A program made the position numbers and the translations under genes. The notes beneath the pieces are model-generated. The model made no database searches, was not told the origin of the DNA, and saw only the letters and a list, made by a program, of their open reading frames with translations. Below, piece after piece: positions 40,123-52,400 of a stretch of 64,000 nt of DNA (positions are counted from its first letter, which is position 1; the number at the start of each line of letters is the position of its first letter). Where the stretch lies: assembly GCA_965240325.2 (NCBI GenBank), contig OZ251233.1, forward strand, positions 310,001-374,000, given 5' to 3'. Source of the DNA: Rebecca billardiae RCC1528. Its lineage: Eukaryota; Protista; Haptophyta.

Positions 40123-43100
40123 TGCGCCTCAGCCTGCTGCACGTACGCGCGCGCCTGCGCGACCAGCGCCCACACGGTGTGCGCGCCGCGCGCGTCCGCG
40201 CCGCCGCCGGCCTCGCTCTCGCCGCTGGCGTCCGCGGCCGCGCCCTCGTCCGCACCGCCCAGCGCCGCGCCGTCCGCGCCGCGCGGCTGCGCCGGCAGCT
40301 CCGCAGCCGCCGGCACGAGCGAGTCCCACGCCCACGCCGCCTCCCTGACGAACGCCAGCGCGGCCTCGAGCGCGGCGATGCGGCCGTGCGCCGTGTCCAA
40401 CTCCTGCCGCAGCCCAGCGTTCACGGCGGCGAGCGCGCGGCGCGGCGTGCTGCCCGCGCGCGCGTGCAGCGCGCTCGACGCCGCGGCGCGCCAGTCCCCG
40501 GCGCGCCACGCGGCCGCGCGAGAGCTCGCCACCGTGCCGGTCGTCGACAGCCGCGCGCCCGTCGCACGCGTCGTCGCGACCGAGAGCCGGCGCACGGGCC
40601 GGCCGGGCGCGGCGCCCGGCGCGCGCTCGCGGCCGCCGCCGCGGCCGCAGCCAGCCGGTGCCTCGTCGTCGTCGTCGTCGTCGTCGACGCCGCCGCCGAG
40701 CACCTCGGTGAGCACGGCGGCGACGGCCGCGGAGGGCCGGGCCGCCGCGGCAGCCGAGCCGCTCGCCGCCGGCGTCGCCGCCCACGCGGGCGCGAGCCAG
40801 CCCAGCGCCGCCGGGTGCGCGCGGCGGCGGCGCGCTGCGGCCGCGAGCGCGGCGCTCACGCGCGGCGCGGCGCGCTCAGCCATGAGCCGCGCGGCAATCA
40901 CCACCGCACTCTCCGCCTCCGACTCGGCGGCGGCGATCTCGACGGCGAGGGCGCACGCCTCTGCGTGGAGTCGGGTCACCGTCTCCGCGCGCGCGCCGCC
41001 CTCCGCCTCGAAGCCGCCCTCGCCAGCGCCCCCACCGAGGCCGCCCTCGGCGGCAGCAGCGGCGGCGGCGGCGCGCACCGCGCGCGCGCCGGCGGCCGCG
41101 CCGTCCGCGCCGCCGTCCGCGGCCGCGTCGGCCCCGCCCCACGGCGCGTCCGCGCCGCCGTGGCTGCTGCGCCGCGCCGCGCGCTCGGTCGCAGCGTCCG
41201 TGAGCGCAGAGTCGCCGTCGTCCGAGCAGCGGCCGCGCGCGCCGCCACCGGCCGCGGCGGCAGCGACCAGCTCGAGGCCGGCGCCGCCGTTGCGCGCGCT
41301 CGCGCCGCCGTGCGCCGCGGCCGAGCGCGCACAGCCGTTGCCGTGCGCTGCGCCGGCGGTGGCGTGCTGCTCGCTGCCGAACGAGCCGCCGGCCGCGCCG
41401 CCGTCCGCGTCGCCGCACGAGCTTCGCGAGCGCGAGCCGCCGTCGCCCTCGCTCCCGGCCCACGCCTCCGCCGCGCGCGCCGCCTCGAGCGCGGCCGCGT
41501 GCGCCTCGTCCGCGCCCGCCGCTGCCGCCCTCATCGCACGCTTCCAGCGCTCAAAGTCGGCCTGCAGAGCGCAGCACGCGCACGGGGGGCGGGGCGCGTG
41601 GGGCGCCGGGCGCGCGGCGTGTGTGCGCGCGCGGCCCGCCCGCGCGCGCGTGCGGCGCGGGCCCGGCGCTCGCGGGCGGCGGCGCGCGGCGGCGCGCGCG
41701 CTCGCACCTGCGAGTGCGCGCTGAGCTGGTGCACCTCCTCGCCGCCCGCGTGCGCGGCCCTGAGCTCCCAGGCCCACGCAGGCGCGCCGCTCAGCTTCGT
41801 CCCGCGCGGGTGCAGCGTCGCCTTCCGCACGCTGCCCAGCTGCAGGCAGCACAGCGGCGTGCGCGCCGTGTGTGCGCTGAACAGCAGCAGGCAACCACCG
41901 CTCGTGAGCGCCGCCCAGCGCGTGTGCGCGGCGCGCGCGGCGCGCGCGGCGGCGCCGACGCCGGCGGAAGGGGCGGCGGTCGCGGCGGCGGTGGCGAGCG
42001 CGCCGAGCGCCGCGCCGGACACGCAGCGGTGCTCCAGGTACCCCGACGTCACGAGCTGCTGCGAGCACACCGCCACGGGCTCGGCCAGCGCGGTGCCAGC
42101 GCACGCGGCGCGCAGCAGAGCGCACGTCTGTGCGCGCAGCCGCGCGCTCGGCGCGCGCAGGTAGAGCGGCGGCGCGTCGGGCGGCGCGAGGACGAAGGCG
42201 GTGTCGCCGCCGTCCGCGCGCCCCGCCCCGCCCCCGCCGGCGTCGAGCACGCCCGTCGCGCGCCTGTGGTGCGCCTCCGTCAGCGCCGCCACCGTCGTGC
42301 CGTCGCCGAGCGTCGCGGCGGCTCTGAACGCGCCGCCCGCCCAGAGCAGCGCCACGCCGGTGAGCGGCTCGATCTCGAGGACGAGATTCACGCCGTCGCA
42401 CAGCTGCGGCTTGGTCGCGCCCACCAGCGCGGGGGTGTGCGCGGCGCCGCGCGCGCGCGCGCGCGAGCCCGCCGCGCGCGAGCCGCGCGCCGCGCCGCCG
42501 TGCGCCGCGGCCGCGGCCGCGGCCGCCGCGCCGCCGCCGAGCAGCAAGCCGGCGCCGCCGCCGTGCGCGGCCACGCCTCCGGCGCCGGCGCCGGCGCCGG
42601 CGCCGCCGTAGCCGCCGCCGCCAAAGACGGGCAGGAAGCACAGCCCGCGCCGCAGCCTGAGCTCCAGCGGCGCGTCCGCCGCCGCGCGCGACGGCGCTGC
42701 GGCGATCTCCTTGGCAAGGCGCAGCAGCCGCCACTCCGCGTGCAGCGCGCTCTGCAGCAGCGCGCTGTGCTCCTGCCCCGCGGCCTTGAAGCTGCTGCTG
42801 TCGCCGAGGGCGAGGCCGCCCACGCCCACGCTCATGCCGCGGCCCGCTGCCGCCGCCGCCGCACCGGCCCCGCCGCCGCCCGCGCCGCCCGCGCCGGCGA
42901 GCGACGACGCGGACGTTTGCGGCGTGGGCGTGGGCGTGCGCGGAGGGGCCGCCCACGCGCACGGCCCGCCCCCGCCGCCCCCGCCGCCGCCCATGCCGCC
43001 GCAGAGCGAGCGCGCGTCGGCTGCTCGGCCCGGCTGCGCGCCGCGCGCGTGCCCGCCCGCGGCCACCGTGCCACGGCCACCGCCCGCCACGCTGCGCGCC

Positions 43101-43322
43101 ACGCCGACGGGCTGGGCCGCGGCAGTGGCGGCCGCCCCCGCGCCGCGCGCCGCCTCCGTCTGCGCGGACACGGCCGAGCTGCGACGCAGGGCGCGCGCAG
43201 CGTCGCGGAGCCGCGCGCCGATCACGCTGCGCGTGTCGTCCGCGTCGGCCGAGGCGGCGCGGCCGGCGTGCACGGGCAGCGAGCCGAGCGTGGACGAGCG
43301 CTCGAGCCCGCGCGCCGAGCCC

Positions 43323-43359
<37 letters not shown>

Positions 43360-44672
43360 GCAGCACGGCGCTCTCCCGCGCCTGCGCGCGCGCCAGCAGC
43401 ACTCGGAGGCGTACCTCGACGGAGCCCGAGGCTTCGATGGCGGCGAGCTCGGCGCAGAGGAGCCGCACGTGCGCGCGCGCGCGCGCGCGCTCGGCGGCGT
43501 GCGCGCGCGCCACGGATGCGGCCACGGCGCGCGCGGCGCTGCCGGCGCCGCGCTGTGAGCTGCCATCAGCATCTGCGTGCGCGCCGTGCGCGCCACTCGA
43601 CAGCGTGCGCGGCAGCTCGGGCGGTGCGCCCCAGAGCTGCCGGCCGCTGGCAATCGCCTCGCTGAACGCGGAGACCCACCGCTGCTTGTCCGCCTGCGCG
43701 CCGGCGCGCGGCGCGCCGGCGTGCGCCGGCGTACGCGCGGACGCGCGGCGCGAGTCAGCGGCGCGGCGCGGCGCGGCGCGGCGCGCGAGCACGCGGCGCG
43801 CGAGCGCGCGCGGAGGCACGAGCGCCGCGCGCGCGCACCATGCCGCGCGCGGCGAAGCGGTGGATCAGCGTGCCCCCGTCGGGCAGGCCTGCCTGCATGC
43901 CGTCCACCGCCGCCGCCGCCGCGCCGCCGCCGCCGCCGCCGTCGCCGTCGGGCGCGCCGCCCGAGCCGCGCCGCCGCGCCGCCGCCGCGCCCTTGGCGGG
44001 CGACTCGCCCTCGTCGGCGAGCAGCATGGTGGCGAAGGCGGCGGCGCTGCCGCCGTCCATGTCCGCGGGCACGCCGGCGGCGCAGCCCGCCTCCTCCGAC
44101 CCCGCCGCGCCCGCGCCCGCGCCGCCCGCCGCGCCGCCGGGCGCGGGCGGCACGTTGGGCGCGGCGTACGCGGGCGGTGGCGCGGCGCACAGCTCGAGGA
44201 CAAACGATTCGAGCTGGGGCTGGACGAGGCCGACGGCGTCGAGCCAGTGCACGTGCGCGGGGCAGCGCGCGGCCTTGTCGTGCGAGATGTACAGCCGGCC
44301 GCTCACCAGCACGAGCCACGCCTTGGACCAGATCAGCGAGCCCTCGAGCATCAGCTCGCCCGCGTGCCACACGCGCTCCGCGTGCGCGCTCAGCGGCTCG
44401 GCGGTGCACGCGGCGCGGATGAGCGCGCACGTGGCGGTGCAGTGGCGGTGCGTGTCCGCGTGCAGCACGAGCGGCTCGCGCCCGGCGAAGAGCACGCACA
44501 GCTGCGGGCGTGTGTGGCCGGCCGGCGCGTGCGATTCGCACGCGGTCACGACGTCCGCGAGGCTGTACTCGCGCCACGGGTGCTCGCGGCGCCAGAGGCG
44601 GAGGACGCCGGCGGGCGGGTCGATCTGCAGCAGCAGCGGCGCGTCGTCCTCGTCGAGTACGGGCAGGAACAT
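39642..44672 (-). CDS. Large multi-PH-domain protein; exons 44672-43839, 43693-41708 and 41561-39642
   Basis: PH-like segments (AGELMLEGSLIWSKAWLVLVSGRLYI...ADKQRWVSAF; SGYLEH...TRWAALTSGGCLLLF...ADFERWKRAM) are joined by GT-AG introns 43694-43838 and 41562-41707. The C-terminus is coiled-coil, poly-P and poly-Q. Confidence 0.72.
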
Positions 44673-45018: not shown

Positions 45019-47614
45019 ATGGAGCGATACCTCAAAGTCGAGACGATCGGCCGCGGCTCGTACGCCAAGGTCAAGAAGGTGAAGCTCGCCGTCTCGGGCG
45101 AGGTCTACGCGATGAAGGTGCGGCCGAGCGCCGGCGCGCCGCCCGCCCGGCGCGGCGGCGGCGGCGCGGCGCGCGCGCGCGCGCGGCGGGGCGGGTCGCA
45201 GGCCCGGAGCTCGCTCCGCGCGCACGCGCGCCCACGCGCGCGCGCGCCCTCCGCCCGCCCCGCGCGCGGGTGCGCGCGCGGCGCAGGTGGTCAAAAAGTC
45301 GCTGCTCAAGCGGCGGCGGCAGTGGAGCGCGGCCGAGGGGCGGTACAAGAACGCGTACGACGACGTGCTGCGCGAGGTGGCGCTGATGAAGAAGCTCAAC
45401 CACCCGAACGTGATCCGCATGCACGAGGTCGTCGACGACCCCGAGAAGGACAAGCTCTGCATCGTCCTCGACTACCACGAGAACGGCGCGCTGATGGACA
45501 CGAGCTGCCTGCCAGACGACCCGATCGCGCCGCTCTCGCGCGAGGACTGCCGCCGCTTCTTCGCGGACGTGGTGGAGGGGCTGACGTACCTCCACTTCCA
45601 GAACGTCGTCCACTTCGACCTCAAGCCGGACAACGTGCTCGTCTCGAAGGAGCGGCGCGGCATCATCGCAGACTTTGGCGTGAGCCGCATGCTCGCCGAC
45701 GCGGACCGCGCGTCCGCCGGCGACGACGTGCTCACCTCGGGCTCGCCGGGCACGCCGATGTACCTGGCGCCCGAGGTGTGGGGCGACACGAAGTACTACG
45801 GCAAGACCGCCGACATCTGGTCGCTCGGCGTCACCCTCTTCGTCATGGTCTTCGGGTACACGCCGTTCCAAGTGGCCTCGCACGACGAGCTGGTCGAGGA
45901 GGTGACTCGACCGAGCCCGGTCAGAATACCCGCCGAGCTGCACGACGCCAAGCTGGGCGAGCTGCTGCAGGGGCTGCTGAGCAAGGACCCGAAGGCGCGG
46001 CTCTCGCTCGCCGACGCCGCCTCGCACCCCTGGCTCGAGGCCGCGAACAAGCCGCGCGGCCTCGCACGGCAGTACTCGCGCATCACGGTGAACGCGGCCG
46101 AGATCCGGGCGGCCGTCACAATCGCCGGCCACGCCAACTCGTTCGCGCGCGACGCGGCGGGGCGGATCGTGAAGCGGACGCGGAAGGCGGAGCGCGACTG
46201 CTACGAGGCGATCACCGGCGGGGCGAAGGCCACGCGCTCCGGCCTCGCCGCCTTCGTCCCGCCGTACCACGGCGAGCTGACGAACGCTGACGCCGTGAGC
46301 TCGCTGCTGCCGTCGGGCGCGGCGAGCCCGCTGCGCGGCCGCGTGGGCACCGACACGCCCACCTCCTCGCCGCTCGCGCCCAAGCTCGGGAGCGGCCTCG
46401 GCGCGCGGCTCGGGCGCAGCTCGGACAGCAACTGCGTCTCGAGCGGCGGCGCCAGCTCCTCCTCGCTCCCGCCGCCGCAGCTCTCCGCCGCGCAGAGCAC
46501 GAGTGGCGCGCGCACGCCGCAGGCCAAGCCCGCGTCCGCCATCCCGATGCCGTCGGTGCTCGCGCAGATGTCCTCGACGTACGACATGCTCGGCCAGCTG
46601 AACACGCAGCTCTCCGGCGCGTCGATCGGCTCCGCGTCGAAGGGCAAGGGCGGCGACTCGGGCGAGCTCAAGGCGCTGTCCGGCGACGGGCGCGACACGT
46701 TCATCGTGCTGGACGACGTGACCGAGGGCATGGCTGACGCGTGCGTGATGGACATTAAGATGGGCACGCGCACATTCACCGACGTGCGCGCGCGCGGGCG
46801 GCACAGCCGCGGGTGCACGCCGGGGGGGCGGGGGGGGGGGGCGAGCCCTCCCCTCGTGCGCGCGCGGGCGAGCCGGCGCACCCCGCCACGCGGCTCCTGC
46901 GCTCACGCCGCGCTGCCCGCGCGCCCCGTGCCTGGCCGGCGTGCTGCGCGCCCGCTCCAGTCGGACATGCGCGACACGACGGCGCGCCCAGACTTGCTCG
47001 CCAAGATGGTCTCGCTCGACAAGAGCGCGCCGACGGAGGAGGAGCGGCGCGTGGGCGCGGTGACGAAGATGCGGTACCTCACCTTCCGCGAGTCGCTCAC
47101 CACCACCGCGCACCTCGGCTTCCGCATCGACGCGATGAAGATCGGCGACGATCCGAACCTCAACGACACGCCGCTCAACTTCAGGCGCGGCCCCACCGAC
47201 CCGACGGCCGTGCTGCGCGAGCTCACGCGCTTCGTGTGCAGCTCGAAGGAGGTGGCGGCGGCGTTCGCGAAGCGGCTGCGCGAGCTGCGCGCCGCGCTCG
47301 AGGCGGACACGTCCTTCTTCCCCACGTACACCCTCATCCGCTCCTCGCTGCTCTTCACCTACGACCACGCCGCCGTCGCGGGCGGCGGGCCGGGCGGCCG
47401 GCCGGAGGTGGGTGTGGGCGTGCACATGATTGACTTCTCGTCGTCAAAGCGCGTGCCGCCCGGCTCGGAGCCGCTCACGCACCGCGCGGCGTGGAGAGAG
47501 GGCTCGGCGGAGGACGGCTACTTGAACGGTGTCGACAACCTCATCGCCATGTTCGACAAAGTCGTCGCGGGCGAAACCGCATGGGACGCGCCGCCGCCAA
47601 CTGCGCGCGGCTAG
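45019..47614 (+). CDS. CaMKK/GRIK-type Ser/Thr kinase fused to an inositol-1,4,5-trisphosphate 3-kinase-like (IPK) domain; exons 45019-45117, 45287-46783 and 46961-47614
   Basis: Kinase motifs: IGRGSYAKV, YAMK, REVALMKKLNHPNVI...EVVDDP, HFDLKPDN, DFG, GTPMYLAPE, DIWSLGVT. IPK motifs: AGHANSF, VPPYHG, CVMDIKMGTRT, LGFRI, SSLLF, MIDF, EDGYL.G.DNL. Confidence 0.92.
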
Positions 47615-49496: not shown

Positions 49497-52400
49497 ATGG
49501 CAGAGTCCGGAAGTACTTGTGCAGCACCCCCAGCGTGGTCGTCCCGGAATTGCCGCGACGGAGCATCATCTTCCGCTTCCGCTTCGTCCATGGCGTCGAG
49601 CGGAATGGATGCCAACGCGTCGCCGACGCGGCCATCGAGCGCGCGTATCGTGGACGTGATCAGGGAGCGCATGGCGGAGGGCCGGCCGTGGTTCTCGCTC
49701 GAGGTGCACGGCCGCCCCGCGCCGCGCCGCCGCGCCAGGGCCCCGCGAACGCCGCCACGGTCGACTCACGCGCGCGCGAGCCTCGCCCTCCGCCCCGCGC
49801 GGCGCACGCGCGCGCGCGCGCGCGCGCGCAGTTCTTCCCGCCGCGCACAGAGGCGGGCGTGGTCAACCTGCAGGAGCGGATCATGCGCATGGCCCAGCTC
49901 CAGCCCGCCTTCGTCGACATCACCTGGACGGCAGGCGGCAAGTCGCACGACCTCTCGATCGAGCTCGCGCGCTTCTGCCTCGAGCAGGGGCTCCCGGTGC
50001 GTGCGGCCTCGCGCGCGCGAACGCGCCGGCCGGCCGGGCGCGGGTGGTCGAAGGCGGCGGTGGCGCGCGTGGGAGCCTGGCTGGCCTCGGGGCGAGCTGT
50101 CGCGCGGCGCCAGCCCAGCGCTGCGCGCGCCAGGCTGCGCGGCACGTGCTGAGCGCCCACCGGCGCGCGCCGCGCACGCACCTCTGTCCCCGCAGGCTCA
50201 GATGCACCTCTCGGTGGCCGGGATGGACGAGGCGGCGGTGCGCGACGCGCTCGACGCCGCGCGCAAGGCGGGCATCGTCAACATCCTCGCGCTCCGTGGC
50301 GACGCCGCCGCCCAGCCCGGCGAGGACGCGCCGCGCGTGAGCGCGTTCGCCCACGCCGTCGACCTGGTCCGATTCATCCGCGCGCACTATGGCGATGCGT
50401 TCTGTGTCGGCGTGGCGGGTGCGCGCCGCGTGCGCGCGGCCGCGCGGGAGGGCTGGGCACAGCGCGCCGCCCCGCTGCGCGCGGCCGAGCGCGGCCGCGC
50501 GCGCCCACACCGCGCCGAGCCGCACGCCTCCTTCGCCTCCCCGCCCTCCTTGCCGTGCCTTTGGTGCGCGCGCGCCGTGCGTGTGCGTGTGCGTGTGCGT
50601 GTGCGTGTGCGTGTGCGTGTGCGTGTGCGTGTGCGTGTGCGTGTGCGTGTGCGTGTGCGCGTGCGCCGTGCGTGTGTGCGTGTGCGTGTGCGTGTGTGTG
50701 TGTGCAGGCTACCCGGAGGGGCACGCGGAGAGCCCTTCGTACGAGGAGGGCATGGCCCACCTCAAGGAGAAGGTGGACGCGGGCGGCGAGTACGTGATCA
50801 CGCAGCAGTTCTTCAACGTCGCGCGCTTCGAGGCCTTCCTCAAGGACTGCGCGGCCGCCGGTGCGGCGGCAGCGCGCGCGGCACGTGCGGCGGTGCCGCG
50901 CCCGCGGTGCCGGGCGCGCCCCGCTGCTGGCGGCGCGCGCGCTCACGGCTGCTGCGCCGCCGCCGCCGCCGCGCGCCGCCCCGGCAGGCATCAGCGTGCC
51001 CGTCATCCCGGGCGTGATGCCCATCCACAACTACGAGTCCTTCCGACGGATCGTGCGCTTCTGCCGCACGGATGTGCCGCCGCCCGTGATGCAGCGGCTC
51101 GGCCCAATCAAGAACGACGACGAGGCGGTCAAGGTGCGCAGCATGCGGCGCGCGCGCGCGGAGTTGCACGCGCGGAGCGCGCGCCGCTCGCTGCCGCGCG
51201 CTGGGACTCGCCGCACGCGGCAGCACGGCGCGGCCGGTGCACGCGGCGCCTGCGCCGCCTCGACCGCCCACCCACCGAGCTGCCGCCCCCGGCCCCACGC
51301 CTGCCGCCCGCCCGCGCAGGCGTACGGCACCGAGCTGGGCGTCTCGATGTGCCAGCAGCTGTTTGCGCACGGCGTGCGCGGCGTGCAGTTCTACACGCTC
51401 AACCTCGAGAAGTGCGTGACGGACATCCTCACCTCGCTCGGATTCGCGCGCGGGCCGGGTGCGCGGCGCGCGCGCGCCGCGGCGCCGCGCACGCGCCGTC
51501 GGCCGCGCCTGCCCCCGCGCGCGCTGAGGCGGCGCGCCCGCTCGGCCGCGCGCGCGCGCGCGCGCAGCCACGCGCGAGGTGCCGTGGCCGCTCGCGCGCA
51601 ACAGCTCAGGCAAGGGCGAGAGCGTGCGGCCGATCTTCTGGGCCAACAGGCCGCAGTCGTACGTGAGCCGCACCGCTCACTGGGACGAGTTTCCCAACGG
51701 CCGCTGGGGCGATCAGCGGTGTGCGCGCGCCGCCGCCCAGCCGCGCACGAGGCCCGCCCAGGAGGATGCCATCGCAAAGTACCATCAAATGCTGACGCAG
51801 CGCGACGCTGCATGCAGACACACCGCTTTTTGCTCGCTGACTGGCTGGCCACGCCCGCCGCGGCCGCGGCCGCGGCACGGCGCGCGCAGCCAGCCCGCGC
51901 CGGCCGCGCGCACCACGCTCACGGCCGCTGCCCCGCGCCGCCCCCGGTGCCGGCGGCGCCGCGCGGCGCGCGCGCGCGCCGGTGCACAGCTCGCCCGCGT
52001 TCGGCGACCTCACCTCGTACCACATGGCCAAGCTGCACGCCGTCAAGTCCTCCGAGCGCCGCGCGGCGTGGGGCCACGAGCTCAGCTCGGTCGACGACGT
52101 GTGCGCGACGTTTGTGCGGTGCGCGCGGCCGTGCGGCCGCGGCCGCGGCCGCGATCGAGCCGCGCGCGCGCCCGTCGCCTGCGCCAACGCCGACCGAGCG
52201 GTGCGCGGCGCCCCCGTGCTCGCGCGCCCCGCCCTCCCGCAGCTACGTGCGCGGGCAGATCCCGATGCTGCCGTGGTGCGAGCTCGCCCTCGCCACCGAG
52301 TCGGAGCGCATCGTCGACGGTCTGGTGCAGCTGAACGCGTGCGGCATGCTCACCATCAACTCGCAGCCCGCGGTCGACGGCGCGCGCTCAGACGACCCCG

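What the first reader, a model, noticed from the sequence alone, without database searches (positions are those of the whole stretch)
45019..47614. Seamless fusion of a CaMKK/SnRK1-activating-type kinase with an animal-type IP3 3-kinase
Seen: the kinase tail ITVNAAEIRAAVT runs directly into IAGHANSF within one exon. The second domain has RPDLLAKMVSLDKSAPTEEE...AVTKMRY..FRE...T..LGFRI and THRAAWREGSAEDGYL, matching the inositol-binding lobe and C-terminus characteristic of metazoan ITPKA/B/C rather than generic IPMK or IP6K. Established: CaMKK/GRIK kinases activate AMPK/SnRK1, and IP3K converts IP3 to IP4. I do not recall this architecture being described. Inference: it could couple Ca2+/inositol-phosphate signalling to energy sensing in an alga.
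Basis: partly seen in the sequence, partly recalled or inferred. Interest (0 to 1): 0.8.

Follow-up and report, generated by a model that had tools for sequence, protein, structure and literature searches.

The report
Haptophyte CaMKK-like kinase fused to IP3 3-kinase
This alga has one real, three-exon gene that joins a CaMKK-like protein kinase directly to an inositol-trisphosphate 3-kinase domain of the kind textbooks call animal-only; the fusion is conserved across haptophyte algae but has not been described or tested.

Summary
Window 45019-47614 (+) holds one gene of three exons encoding 749 aa. The N-terminal Ser/Thr kinase is most like CaMKK1/2. It runs, inside exon 2 and with no stop or intron, into an IPK domain of the IP3 3-kinase (ITPKA/B/C) subtype, not IPMK or IP6K.

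The fusion is not a gene-model artefact:
- Intronless transcripts of relatives (an MMETSP transcript of Pavlovales sp. CCMP2436 and a JGI contig) encode the same continuous protein.
- The Diacronema lutheri orthologue sits in a syntenic locus with the same two intron positions.
- dN/dS is 0.12-0.21 in both domains and across the junction, against 0.88 in a disordered insert.

About 20 further unnamed database clusters share the architecture and the junction motif. One lies on a prymnesiophyte-like contig. All their IPK domains form one clade, apart from the named metazoan ITPKs.

Catalytic and InsP3-binding residues are conserved. The kinase is non-RD (HFD), lacks the CaMKK RP-insert, and its CaM-binding autoinhibitory helix is replaced by the IPK domain.

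Not supported: "animal-specific" (IP3K-like domains also occur in other protists) and any link to energy sensing (untested). No paper describing the fusion was found. The scan also noted such a fusion on another piece of this genome (s1-338943).

The parts
45019..45117 (+). Exon 1 (33 codons): start ATG, Gly-rich loop (IGRGSYAKV) and VAIK-type lysine (YAMK)
   Evidence: The N-terminus MERYLK.ETIGRGSYAKV is shared with P0001, P0002 and P0010. tblastx to D. lutheri L001 8001-8102.
45118..45286 (+). Intron 1, GT..AG, 169 nt, very GC-rich
   Evidence: Absent from the intronless transcripts P0001/L002 and P0002. Same position in D. lutheri.
45287..46783 (+). Exon 2 (499 codons): rest of the kinase domain, junction, IPK N-lobe, disordered insert, and start of the IPK core up to GTRTFTD
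45287..46036 (+). CaMKK-like Ser/Thr kinase catalytic core (non-RD: HFDLKPDN; DFG and APE intact)
   Evidence: Pfam Pkinase E 8.5e-48. PDB best hits CaMKK2/1. Motifs checked.
46037..46120 (+). Post-kinase tail and junction (..RQYSRITVNAAEIRAAVT), homologous to the CaMKK segment that precedes the autoinhibitory/CaM-binding helix
   Evidence: Aligns to VTVTEEEIQNSV of a nematode CaMKK. Conserved in all fusion clusters. dN/dS 0.16.
46121..46282 (+). IPK N-lobe (IAGHANSF .. IVKRT .. ER.CYEAI .. FVPPYHGEL), including the equivalents of ITPKA Ser197 and Lys209
   Evidence: Aligned to ITPKB/A. dN/dS 0.12.
46283..46684 (+). Low-complexity Ser/Ala/Gly/Pro insert between the N-lobe and the core, predicted disordered and unconstrained
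   Evidence: dN/dS 0.88. pLDDT below 50 in the homologous stretch of the model. Length varies between orthologues and the stretch is absent from the prymnesiophyte-type fusions.
46685..46783 (+). IPK core, first part: the DxKxG inositide motif (ACVMDIKMG; the usual Pro is Ala here)
46784..46960 (+). Intron 2, GT..AG, 177 nt, in frame and without a stop, contains a long G run
   Evidence: Spliced out in P0001, P0002 and P0010 (..TRTFT[DE]|SD..). Database proteins P0005, P0006, P0007 and P0011 read into the homologous intron.
46961..47614 (+). Exon 3 (217 codons plus stop): four-helix IP-lobe, C-lobe (SSLLFTYD, MIDFS), C-terminal HRAAW..EDGYL..DNLI helix; stop codon at 47612-47614
   Evidence: Model helices and Foldseek matches.

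Best explanation
Window 45019-47614 (+) is a single, intact, selectively maintained haptophyte gene (Pavlovales type) of 749 aa that encodes a two-enzyme protein. The N-terminal half is a CaMKK-like, non-RD Ser/Thr protein kinase. Its C-terminal tail runs straight into the first strand of an inositol polyphosphate kinase domain of the IP3 3-kinase subtype. The IPK domain begins exactly where canonical CaMKKs carry their autoinhibitory, calmodulin-binding helix. Conversely, the IPK domain lacks the N-terminal calmodulin-binding and targeting region of animal ITPKs. Shown here: gene structure, architecture, subtype of each domain, conservation of catalytic and InsP3-contacting residues, purifying selection on both domains and on the junction, a single clade for the fusion, and its presence in both major haptophyte lineages. 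Inferred: the IPK half phosphorylates Ins(1,4,5)P3 at the 3-OH to give Ins(1,3,4,5)P4, so it terminates or reshapes InsP3/Ca2+ signals. The kinase half is an active protein kinase. The tight, conserved tether suggests the two activities regulate each other or act at the same place in one Ca2+/inositide signalling step. This would parallel animals, where the Ca2+/CaM-kinase system and IP3 3-kinase are linked in trans. The confidence given is for the whole statement: about 0.9 for the gene, architecture and subtypes, about 0.6 for both halves being active with InsP3 as substrate.
For: Architecture: Pkinase plus IPK in one frame. Spliced model of 749 aa with canonical GT..AG introns. Subtype of each domain: CaMKK2/1 are the best PDB kinase hits. 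A profile of the IPK half scores 134-144 bits on ITPKA/B/C against 15-22 bits on IPMK, with no IP6K hit. The AF2 model (pLDDT 80.6) has four IP-lobe helices. Its top 24 Foldseek hits are all IP3K (TM 0.81-0.91 by target length for the top 22), against 0.66-0.72 for IPMK and IP6K. A four-helix IP-lobe is the IP3K hallmark and IPMK has one helix (PMC10876669). Residues: the equivalents of ITPKA K209, D262, K264, R285, K291, K312, Y315, R319, R331, K336 and D416 are all kept. This comes from the alignment with an offset of +182. K209Q, K291Q and K312Q are inactive in ITPKA (PMC8292763), and Lys264 binds the 3-OH. The fusion is real: intronless transcripts P0001 (L002) and the MMETSP transcript P0002 encode the same continuous protein. 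The D. lutheri orthologue lies in a syntenic locus with the same intron positions. Selection: dN/dS is 0.21 in the kinase, 0.16 at the junction, 0.12 and 0.19 in the IPK parts, and 0.88 in the insert. Spread: about 20 clusters carry PF00069 plus PF03770, and 47 sequences in hand have both domains with conserved motifs. All fusion IPK domains fall in one clade, SH-aLRT 97. P0104 lies on a contig whose sideroflexin neighbour is closest to Isochrysis, Prymnesium and Scyphosphaera. Replacement of the CaM helix is shown in the alignment.
Against: No RNA data are available for this organism, since no run was listed. Transcript support therefore comes from relatives that are 68-72% identical. No enzymatic data exist for any member. 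The window copy has Ala for the Pro of PxxxDxKxG. ITPKA Lys419 is Ser in the Pavlovales sequences, and Met288 and Met316 are Leu, so substrate preference could differ from InsP3. The kinase lacks the HRD Arg and the RP-insert, so CaMKK-like substrate choice is not assured. The tree is unrooted because no IPMK or IP6K outgroup could be fetched, and the deep splits have weak support (75). Most fusion-bearing clusters have no taxonomic label.
Confidence: 0.72

Rival explanations
1. Annotation or ORF artefact: two adjacent genes, a kinase and an IPK, merely read through in frame in GC-rich DNA where stop codons are rare, and are expressed separately.
For: GC is about 73% here and long spurious ORFs abound on both strands. 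Intron 2 itself is stop-free in frame. No RNA run was listed for this genome.
Against: Only about 28 residues separate the kinase end from the IPK start, and they are conserved (dN/dS 0.16). The IPK part has no start codon. Intronless transcripts from two relatives and several metatranscriptome contigs encode the continuous protein. The junction motif is conserved in about 20 clusters.
Confidence: 0.03
2. The IPK domain is a generic IPMK or IP6K-type multikinase, or one that makes higher InsPs or PP-InsPs, and only superficially resembles IP3K.
For: All IPK subfamilies share DxKxG, SSLL and IDF motifs. Pro to Ala in PxxxDxKxG, loss of the Lys419 equivalent and Met to Leu changes leave room for altered specificity. 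Haptophytes need some route to InsP6.
Against: The profile scores 134-144 bits on ITPKs against at most 22 bits on IPMK and nothing on IP6K. The four-helix IP-lobe aligns without gaps to ITPKA. Structural TM is 0.81-0.91 against 0.66-0.72. All phosphate-contacting residues are kept.
Confidence: 0.1
3. The IPK half was recently transferred from an animal (horizontal transfer or contamination), which would explain an 'animal-type' IP3K in an alga.
For: Almost all named relatives are metazoan ITPKs. Reviews state that IP3K is restricted to metazoa (PMC8024741, PMC11000326).
Against: The gene has host-like GC and GC-rich introns. It sits in a locus syntenic with D. lutheri. Identity to animal ITPKs is only about 27-33%. 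Fusion IPK domains form their own long-stemmed clade (SH-aLRT 97) on the opposite side of the tree from the oyster, insect, nematode and fluke sequences. Other protist IP3K-like sequences exist.
Confidence: 0.04
4. One of the two halves is a catalytically dead regulatory module: a pseudokinase scaffold, or an InsP-binding sensor without turnover.
For: HRD is HFD. The NCBI D. lutheri model has DLG for DFG. A divergent sub-clade (P0149, P0073, P0160) has lost the Asp/Lys of DxKxG, which shows the family tolerates loss of IPK catalysis.
Against: In the window copy the VAIK Lys, the alphaC Glu, the HxD Asp, the DLKPDN Asn, DFG and APE are all intact, as are the IPK Lys, Asp, SSLL and IDF motifs. 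Non-RD kinases are normally active. A Logan/ENA sequence in the same 90% cluster as the D. lutheri protein (P0006) has DFG.
Confidence: 0.12

Closest known systems
Metazoan inositol 1,4,5-trisphosphate 3-kinases ITPKA/B/C (PDB 1W2C, 2AQX, 2A98, 8PP8)
   Same: Same IPK subtype, with N-lobe, C-lobe and a four-helix IP-lobe of the same length. The DxKxG, SSLL and IDF motifs are kept, as are the equivalents of K209, D262, K264, R285, K291, K312, Y315, R319, K336 and D416, and the C-terminal HR..W..G..EDGYL..DNLI helix.
   Different: There is no N-terminal F-actin or membrane targeting region and no CaM-binding helix; a protein kinase domain sits there instead. A disordered insert of about 134 aa splits the N-lobe from the core. 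There are Pro to Ala, Lys419 to Ser and Met288/316 to Leu changes. Identity is only about 27-33%. The lineage is haptophyte, not Metazoa.
CaMKK1/CaMKK2 (K07359), and by extension the upstream-kinase group that includes plant GRIK1/2 and yeast Sak1/Tos3/Elm1
   Same: It is the best-matching kinase family (150 and 144 bits). It shares the ..EV.DDP..D.LY/C.V.. motif after the alphaC helix, and the post-kinase V.VTEEE...V tail.
   Different: HRD is replaced by HFD (non-RD). The Arg/Pro-rich insert is missing (9-column gap, no Pro). The autoinhibitory/CaM-binding helix is replaced by the IPK domain. Whether it phosphorylates the T-loops of AMPK/SnRK1 or CaMK-type kinases is unknown. GRIK could not be compared because no sequence was at hand.
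Unnamed database proteins of the same architecture: Diacronema lutheri KAG8465192.1 (UniRef A0A8J5XJ22, 'protein kinase domain-containing protein'), Pavlovales sp. CCMP2436 KAJ1639532.1, and an MMETSP transcript
   Same: They are orthologues at 68-72% identity, with the same domain order and junction. The two intron positions and the upstream neighbour are the same in D. lutheri.
   Different: No database protein is more than 74% identical to the window protein, so this species' copy is new. The NCBI model KAJ1639532.1 keeps intron 1 as coding.
IPMK (Ipk2/Arg82) and IP6K (Kcs1, EhIP6KA)
   Same: Same IPK superfamily fold and ATP-grasp-like core (Foldseek E about 1e-10).
   Different: IPMK has a single IP-lobe helix (PMC10876669). 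Sequence similarity is limited to the 28 residues around DxKxG.

Membership tests
IPK superfamily (Pfam PF03770) | Match above the Pfam gathering score; DxKxG, SSLL and IDF catalytic motifs | tested here: met
   107.1 bits against a cut-off of 22.2. Motifs are ACVMDIKMG, RSSLLFTY and MIDFS. The leading Pro of PxxxDxKxG is Ala in this copy.
IP3 3-kinase subfamily (ITPKA/B/C, K00911) | Closer in sequence to IP3K than to IPMK or IP6K | tested here: met
   ITPKs score 134-144 bits (E 1e-38 to 1e-41) over 227-229 profile positions. IPMK scores 15-22 bits on 28 positions. No IP6K hit.
IP3 3-kinase subfamily (ITPKA/B/C, K00911) | Four-helix IP-lobe inserted in the C-lobe (IPMK has one helix) | tested here: met
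   Gap-free alignment of the lobe to ITPKA/B. The model has helices 197-206, 213-218, 223-232 and 236-239. TM to ITPKs is 0.81-0.91 against 0.66-0.72 for IPMK and IP6K. The feature is defined in PMC10876669.
IP3 3-kinase subfamily (ITPKA/B/C, K00911) | InsP3-contacting and essential residues (ITPKA K209, K264, R285, K291, K312, Y315, R319, K336, D416) | tested here: met
   All are conserved by the alignment. Essentiality of K209, K291 and K312 comes from PMC8292763, and the role of Lys264 from PMC10876669. R285, R319 and K336 as phosphate ligands rest on my recollection of the 1W2C structure paper. Lys419 is Ser and Met288/316 are Leu.
IP3 3-kinase subfamily (ITPKA/B/C, K00911) | Ins(1,4,5)P3 to Ins(1,3,4,5)P4 activity | not testable with these tools
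   Needs an enzyme assay.
IP3 3-kinase subfamily (ITPKA/B/C, K00911) | Ca2+/calmodulin-binding segment N-terminal to the catalytic domain (metazoan isoforms) | tested here: not met
   Only about 28 residues (..EAANKPRGLARQYSRITVNAAEIRAAVT) lie between the kinase end and the IAGH start, and they align to the CaMKK tail, not to a basic amphipathic helix.
CaMKK (K07359) | Kinase core closest to CaMKK among kinases | tested here: met
   CaMKK2 at 150 bits and CaMKK1 at 144 bits, against the next family at 118 bits. The nearest kinase-only database hits are labelled CAMKK2 or CaMKK.
CaMKK (K07359) | Arg/Pro-rich (RP) insert between beta3 and alphaC | tested here: not met
   The segment is 9 columns shorter than in a nematode CaMKK and has no proline. 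That the RP-insert is needed to recognise CaMKI/IV is from my own knowledge.
CaMKK (K07359) | C-terminal autoinhibitory plus CaM-binding helix after the V.VTEEE..SV tail | tested here: not met
   The tail is present, but the IPK domain starts where the helix would be.
CaMKK (K07359) | RD kinase (HRD) and catalytic residues | tested here: inconclusive
   Catalytic Lys, Glu, Asp, Asn, DFG and APE are present, but HRD is HFD (HYD in other fusion clusters), which makes it a non-RD kinase.
AMPK/SnRK1-activating kinases (GRIK, Sak1/Tos3/Elm1, LKB1) | Phosphorylates the T-loop of an AMPK/SnRK1 alpha subunit | not testable with these tools
   LKB1 scores only 104.7 bits. No GRIK sequence was available for comparison.

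The most novel reading that the evidence does not exclude
The IPK domain has taken over the role of the CaMKK autoinhibitory/CaM-binding helix. On this reading the protein is an inositide-gated protein kinase, in which InsP3 or ATP binding to the IP3K module switches the tethered CaMKK-like kinase. Alternatively it works the other way, as a kinase-gated IP3 3-kinase through intramolecular phosphorylation. Either way, InsP3 levels would be wired directly to a protein-phosphorylation cascade in haptophytes without calmodulin. It would also mean that the IP3 3-kinase subtype predates, or arose outside, animals. The catalytically degenerate IPK sub-clade (P0149, P0073, P0160) would then be pure sensor versions.
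Probability: 0.15. Interest if true: 0.85.

Novelty: new variant of a known kind. Interest (0 to 1): 0.66.

Why it matters
Reviews of inositol phosphate kinases treat the IP3 3-kinase subtype as a late, metazoan invention tied to InsP3/Ca2+ signalling (PMC8024741, PMC11000326). This locus shows a genuine IP3K-type domain, with a four-helix IP-lobe and a full ligand set, encoded in haptophyte nuclear genomes and under purifying selection.

It is always welded to a CaMKK-like protein kinase at one conserved junction. That is a Rosetta-stone link between the CaM-kinase-cascade branch of protein kinases and InsP3 metabolism. In animals these two are connected only in trans, through CaM binding and CaMKII phosphorylation of ITPKs.

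The fusion gives a concrete, testable entry point into Ca2+/inositide signalling in an ecologically major algal phylum that includes the coccolithophores. It is also a natural construct for asking how a protein kinase and an inositol phosphate kinase regulate each other. No paper describing the architecture was found, and the public copies are labelled 'hypothetical' or 'protein kinase domain-containing'.

Tried and rejected
- RNA evidence for this genome: the look-up of sequencing runs listed no run, so read laying could not be used and was not called.
- Outgroup rooting of the IPK tree: no IPMK or IP6K sequence could be obtained by reference, because only the best 150 of 1679 hits were returned. 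The tree is therefore midpoint-drawn and read as unrooted.
- Taxonomy of the unnamed fusion clusters: cluster look-ups gave no names. One contig was placed as prymnesiophyte-like through its sideroflexin neighbour. A guess that the 'arlington' record name meant the Prymnesium parvum strain set was not borne out by that preprint. The L008 metagenome contig remains unassigned.
- Literature: searches for the architecture, for CaMKK plus inositol in haptophytes, for PF03770 plus PF00069, and for IP3K in unicellular holozoans found nothing on this fusion. The two Ca2+-toolkit papers checked do not mention IP3K or CaMKK. The BMC Genomics 2024 'IP3K in plants and animals' paper counts plant, algal and fungal genes as IP3K (I take these to be IPK2/IPMK-type), so it does not bear on the subtype question.
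- The ESM Atlas look-alike search only returned generic IPK clusters.
- A full-length AF2 model was not run, because the tool returns no inter-domain error map and could not show domain packing.
- Rejected: read-through artefact, IPMK or IP6K identity, recent transfer from animals (see the rival explanations).
- Emiliania and Chrysochromulina: no NCBI-named fusion turned up. The word-limited search cannot prove absence.
Full report
**Observation and gene model**

The region holds a 775-codon ORF (45287-47614, +) that matches Pfam Pkinase (E 8.5e-48) and IPK PF03770 (E 1.3e-30) in one frame. An upstream piece at 45019-45117 carries the start of the kinase domain.

Reading the DNA and splicing it gives three exons: 45019-45117, 45287-46783 and 46961-47614.
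- Intron 1 (45118-45286) is 169 nt with GT..AG ends.
- Intron 2 (46784-46960) is 177 nt with GT..AG ends. It is in frame and stop-free, so it adds 59 spurious residues to the plain ORF.
- The product is 749 aa.

The kinase tail ..SRITVNAAEIRAAVT is followed directly by IAGHANSF at 46121, inside exon 2.

**What the two halves are**

Against PDB sequences, the kinase half hits CaMKK2 (150 bits, E 6e-43) and CaMKK1 (144 bits). The next family (SNRK) scores 118 bits and LKB1 scores 105 bits. In the large protein search, the nearest kinase-only relatives that carry a name are labelled CAMKK2/K07359 or CaMKK.

The IPK half hits only ITPKA/B/C at E below 0.01. A profile of four family members sharpens this:
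- ITPKs score 134-144 bits over the whole 245-position profile.
- IPMKs score 15-22 bits, on the 28 residues around DxKxG only.
- IP6K is not found at all.

An AlphaFold2 model of the IPK half of the orthologue P0001 was built from a 75-sequence alignment (mean pLDDT 80.6, pTM 0.79).
- It shows the N-lobe, a disordered insert, and four short helices in the IP-lobe.
- Its top 24 Foldseek PDB hits are all IP3 3-kinases; the top 22 have TM 0.81-0.91 by target length and rmsd 2.8-4.1 Å.
- IPMK and IP6K follow at TM 0.66-0.72 and rmsd 5.5-8.5 Å.
- A four-helix IP-lobe is the feature that separates IP3K from IPMK, which has one helix (PMC10876669).

**Active sites**

The alignment, where chain index plus 182 gives human ITPKA numbering, shows these equivalents conserved: S197, K209, D262, K264, R285, K291, K312, Y315, R319, R331, K336 and D416.
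- K209Q, K291Q and K312Q abolish ITPKA activity (PMC8292763).
- Lys264 binds the 3-OH that is phosphorylated (PMC10876669).

The differences are these:
- The Pro of PxxxDxKxG is Ala in this copy.
- Lys419 is Ser in the Pavlovales sequences. K419Q keeps 46% activity in ITPKA.
- Met288 and Met316 are Leu, Glu333 is Asp, and Lys347 is Arg.

In the kinase half the Gly-loop, VAIK Lys, alphaC Glu, catalytic Asp and Asn (HFDLKPDN), DFG and APE are intact. HRD is HFD, however, which makes it a non-RD kinase.

Alignment with a nematode CaMKK shows three things:
- The basic, proline-rich insert after beta3 is missing (9-column gap, no Pro).
- The post-kinase tail (VTVTEEEIQNSV in CaMKK) is kept.
- The IPK domain starts exactly where CaMKK has its autoinhibitory/CaM-binding helix.

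**Is the fusion real?**

No RNA run was listed for this genome, so direct evidence is lacking. The indirect evidence is strong.
1. P0001 sits on a 2449-nt JGI contig as an uninterrupted 688-codon ORF (L002). P0002 is a complete MMETSP transcript ORF that clusters with Pavlovales sp. CCMP2436 KAJ1639532.1. Both encode kinase plus IPK continuously, and both splice exactly where I placed the two introns.
2. The Diacronema lutheri orthologue KAG8465192.1 (L001) has the same exon layout. It has the same divergently transcribed upstream neighbour, a PH-domain protein, collinear with window 42029-44672.
3. Nei-Gojobori dN/dS between the window CDS and the P0001 transcript is 0.21 (kinase), 0.16 (junction), 0.12 (IPK N-lobe) and 0.19 (IPK core). 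It is 0.88 in the low-complexity insert. dS is high (0.76-1.2), so the ratios are approximate.

**How widespread is it?**

An exhaustive HMMER search of 1.84 billion representatives with the IPK profile gave 1679 hits at E up to 1e-3. Among the best 150, P0014, P0021, P0039 and P0104, together with the fragments P0020 and P0149, also carry a kinase domain.

A profile search with full-length fusions found about 20 clusters at 90% identity annotated PF00069 plus PF03770. In all, 47 sequences in hand have both domains.

All share the junction pattern (W.KIEV..EEL..AV, then .GH..NF). Nearly all keep the catalytic motifs.

Only the two Pavlovales proteins have NCBI names. P0104 lies on a 56.7-kb ENA contig as a single exon. 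Its sideroflexin neighbour is closest, among named proteins, to Isochrysis (63%), Prymnesium (59-62%) and Scyphosphaera (57%). That contig is therefore prymnesiophyte-like, and the fusion appears to span both haptophyte classes.

No database protein is more than 74% identical to the window protein.

**Phylogeny**

The tree of 154 non-redundant IPK domains was built with IQ-TREE, LG+C20 PMSF, and SH-aLRT support.
- All 22 fusion rows fall in one clade (support 97). It also holds six short rows.
- Three of the six start inside the domain (P0013, P0046, P0064), P0160 lacks the N-lobe, and one still carries the junction motif (P0073). The sixth, P0022, may be a stand-alone IPK; this was left unresolved.
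- The pattern fits a single origin of the fusion.
- Named animal ITPKs (oyster, black soldier fly, Trichuris, Clonorchis) lie on the other side of the tree.

IP3K-like sequences that are not from animals also exist: MMETSP transcripts, Pigoraptor chileana, and a Tara 0.22-3 µm gene labelled K00911. So the subtype is not animal-only, and nothing suggests recent transfer from an animal.

The tree is unrooted and its deepest split is weak (75).

**Mechanism**

Shown: one polypeptide with two apparently competent catalytic centres, a short conserved tether, and loss of the calmodulin-binding elements that regulate each parent family in animals.

Inferred:
- The IPK half converts Ins(1,4,5)P3 to Ins(1,3,4,5)P4.
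- The kinase half is constitutively primed, as non-RD kinases are.
- The two halves regulate each other or act on one signalling node.

It is weakened by the missing RP-insert and the non-RD active site.

**Comparison with the literature**

Reviews state that IP3-3K arose late, with metazoan InsP3/Ca2+ signalling (PMC8024741), and that IP3Ks are restricted to metazoans (cited in PMC11000326). I found no paper on a protein kinase-IPK fusion or on IP3K in haptophytes.

The scan's own index lists an unchecked first-reader note of a 'CAMKK-type protein kinase fused to an inositol polyphosphate kinase' on another piece of the same genome (s1-338943). This may be a paralogue or a second haplotype. 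I could not inspect it.

**Verdict**

This is a new, conserved architecture built from two known enzyme families. It is present but unnamed in databases, and it is biochemically untested.

Noticed in passing
window 42029-44672 (-): The divergently transcribed upstream gene is collinear by tblastx with the D. lutheri 1427-aa PH-domain protein next to the orthologous fusion gene. It lies in DNA of about 83-84% GC and gave no Pfam hit on the ORF pieces tried.
   Followed up: partly
window about 49820-50420 (+): The downstream gene is a methylenetetrahydrofolate reductase (Pfam MTHFR, E 7e-12 and 7e-17 on two ORF pieces in different frames), so it is split by at least one intron. This differs from the D. 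lutheri downstream neighbour, a RAP/FAST-domain protein, so synteny holds only upstream.
   Followed up: partly
P0149, P0073, P0160 (relatives, not in the window): A divergent sub-clade of the fusion family has lost the Asp and Lys of the DxKxG inositide motif (MAVTMG, LALLMG, LSLLMG) while keeping the rest of the IP-lobe. These may be catalytically dead, sensor-like IPK domains.
   Followed up: no
P0104 (L003:10001-12730), P0174, P0014, P0166: The prymnesiophyte-type fusions carry N-terminal tandem Pro-rich repeats ending in PMWGNK or PMWANR, up to about 8 copies. The Pavlovales proteins and the window gene lack them.
   Followed up: no
P0008 (NCBI KAJ1639532.1), P0005, P0006, P0007, P0011: Several public gene models of this family are mis-spliced. 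KAJ1639532.1 translates intron 1 (49 extra residues compared with its own MMETSP transcript). Four other predicted proteins read into intron 2 and end in Arg/Pro/Ala-rich nonsense.
   Followed up: yes
P0010 (D. lutheri KAG8465192.1) compared with P0006: The NCBI D. lutheri protein has DLG where a near-identical Logan/ENA sequence and all other family members have DFG. This is either a strain variant or an assembly error at the Mg-binding motif.
   Followed up: no
P0150/P0314, P0018/P0312, P0023/P0323, P0019: Stand-alone IP3K-type proteins occur in non-animal data: a Tara Oceans 0.22-3 µm scaffold (K00911), two MMETSP transcripts and Pigoraptor chileana. This runs against the review statement that IP3K is metazoan-restricted.
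   Followed up: partly
window 46784-46960: Intron 2 is in frame, has no stop codon and contains a run of more than 20 G with one interruption. In such GC-rich genomes, naive ORF reading silently inserts intron-encoded Arg/Gly/Pro/Ala text into domains.
   Followed up: yes
It could be a paralogue or an allelic contig. I could not reach it from this window.
   Followed up: no
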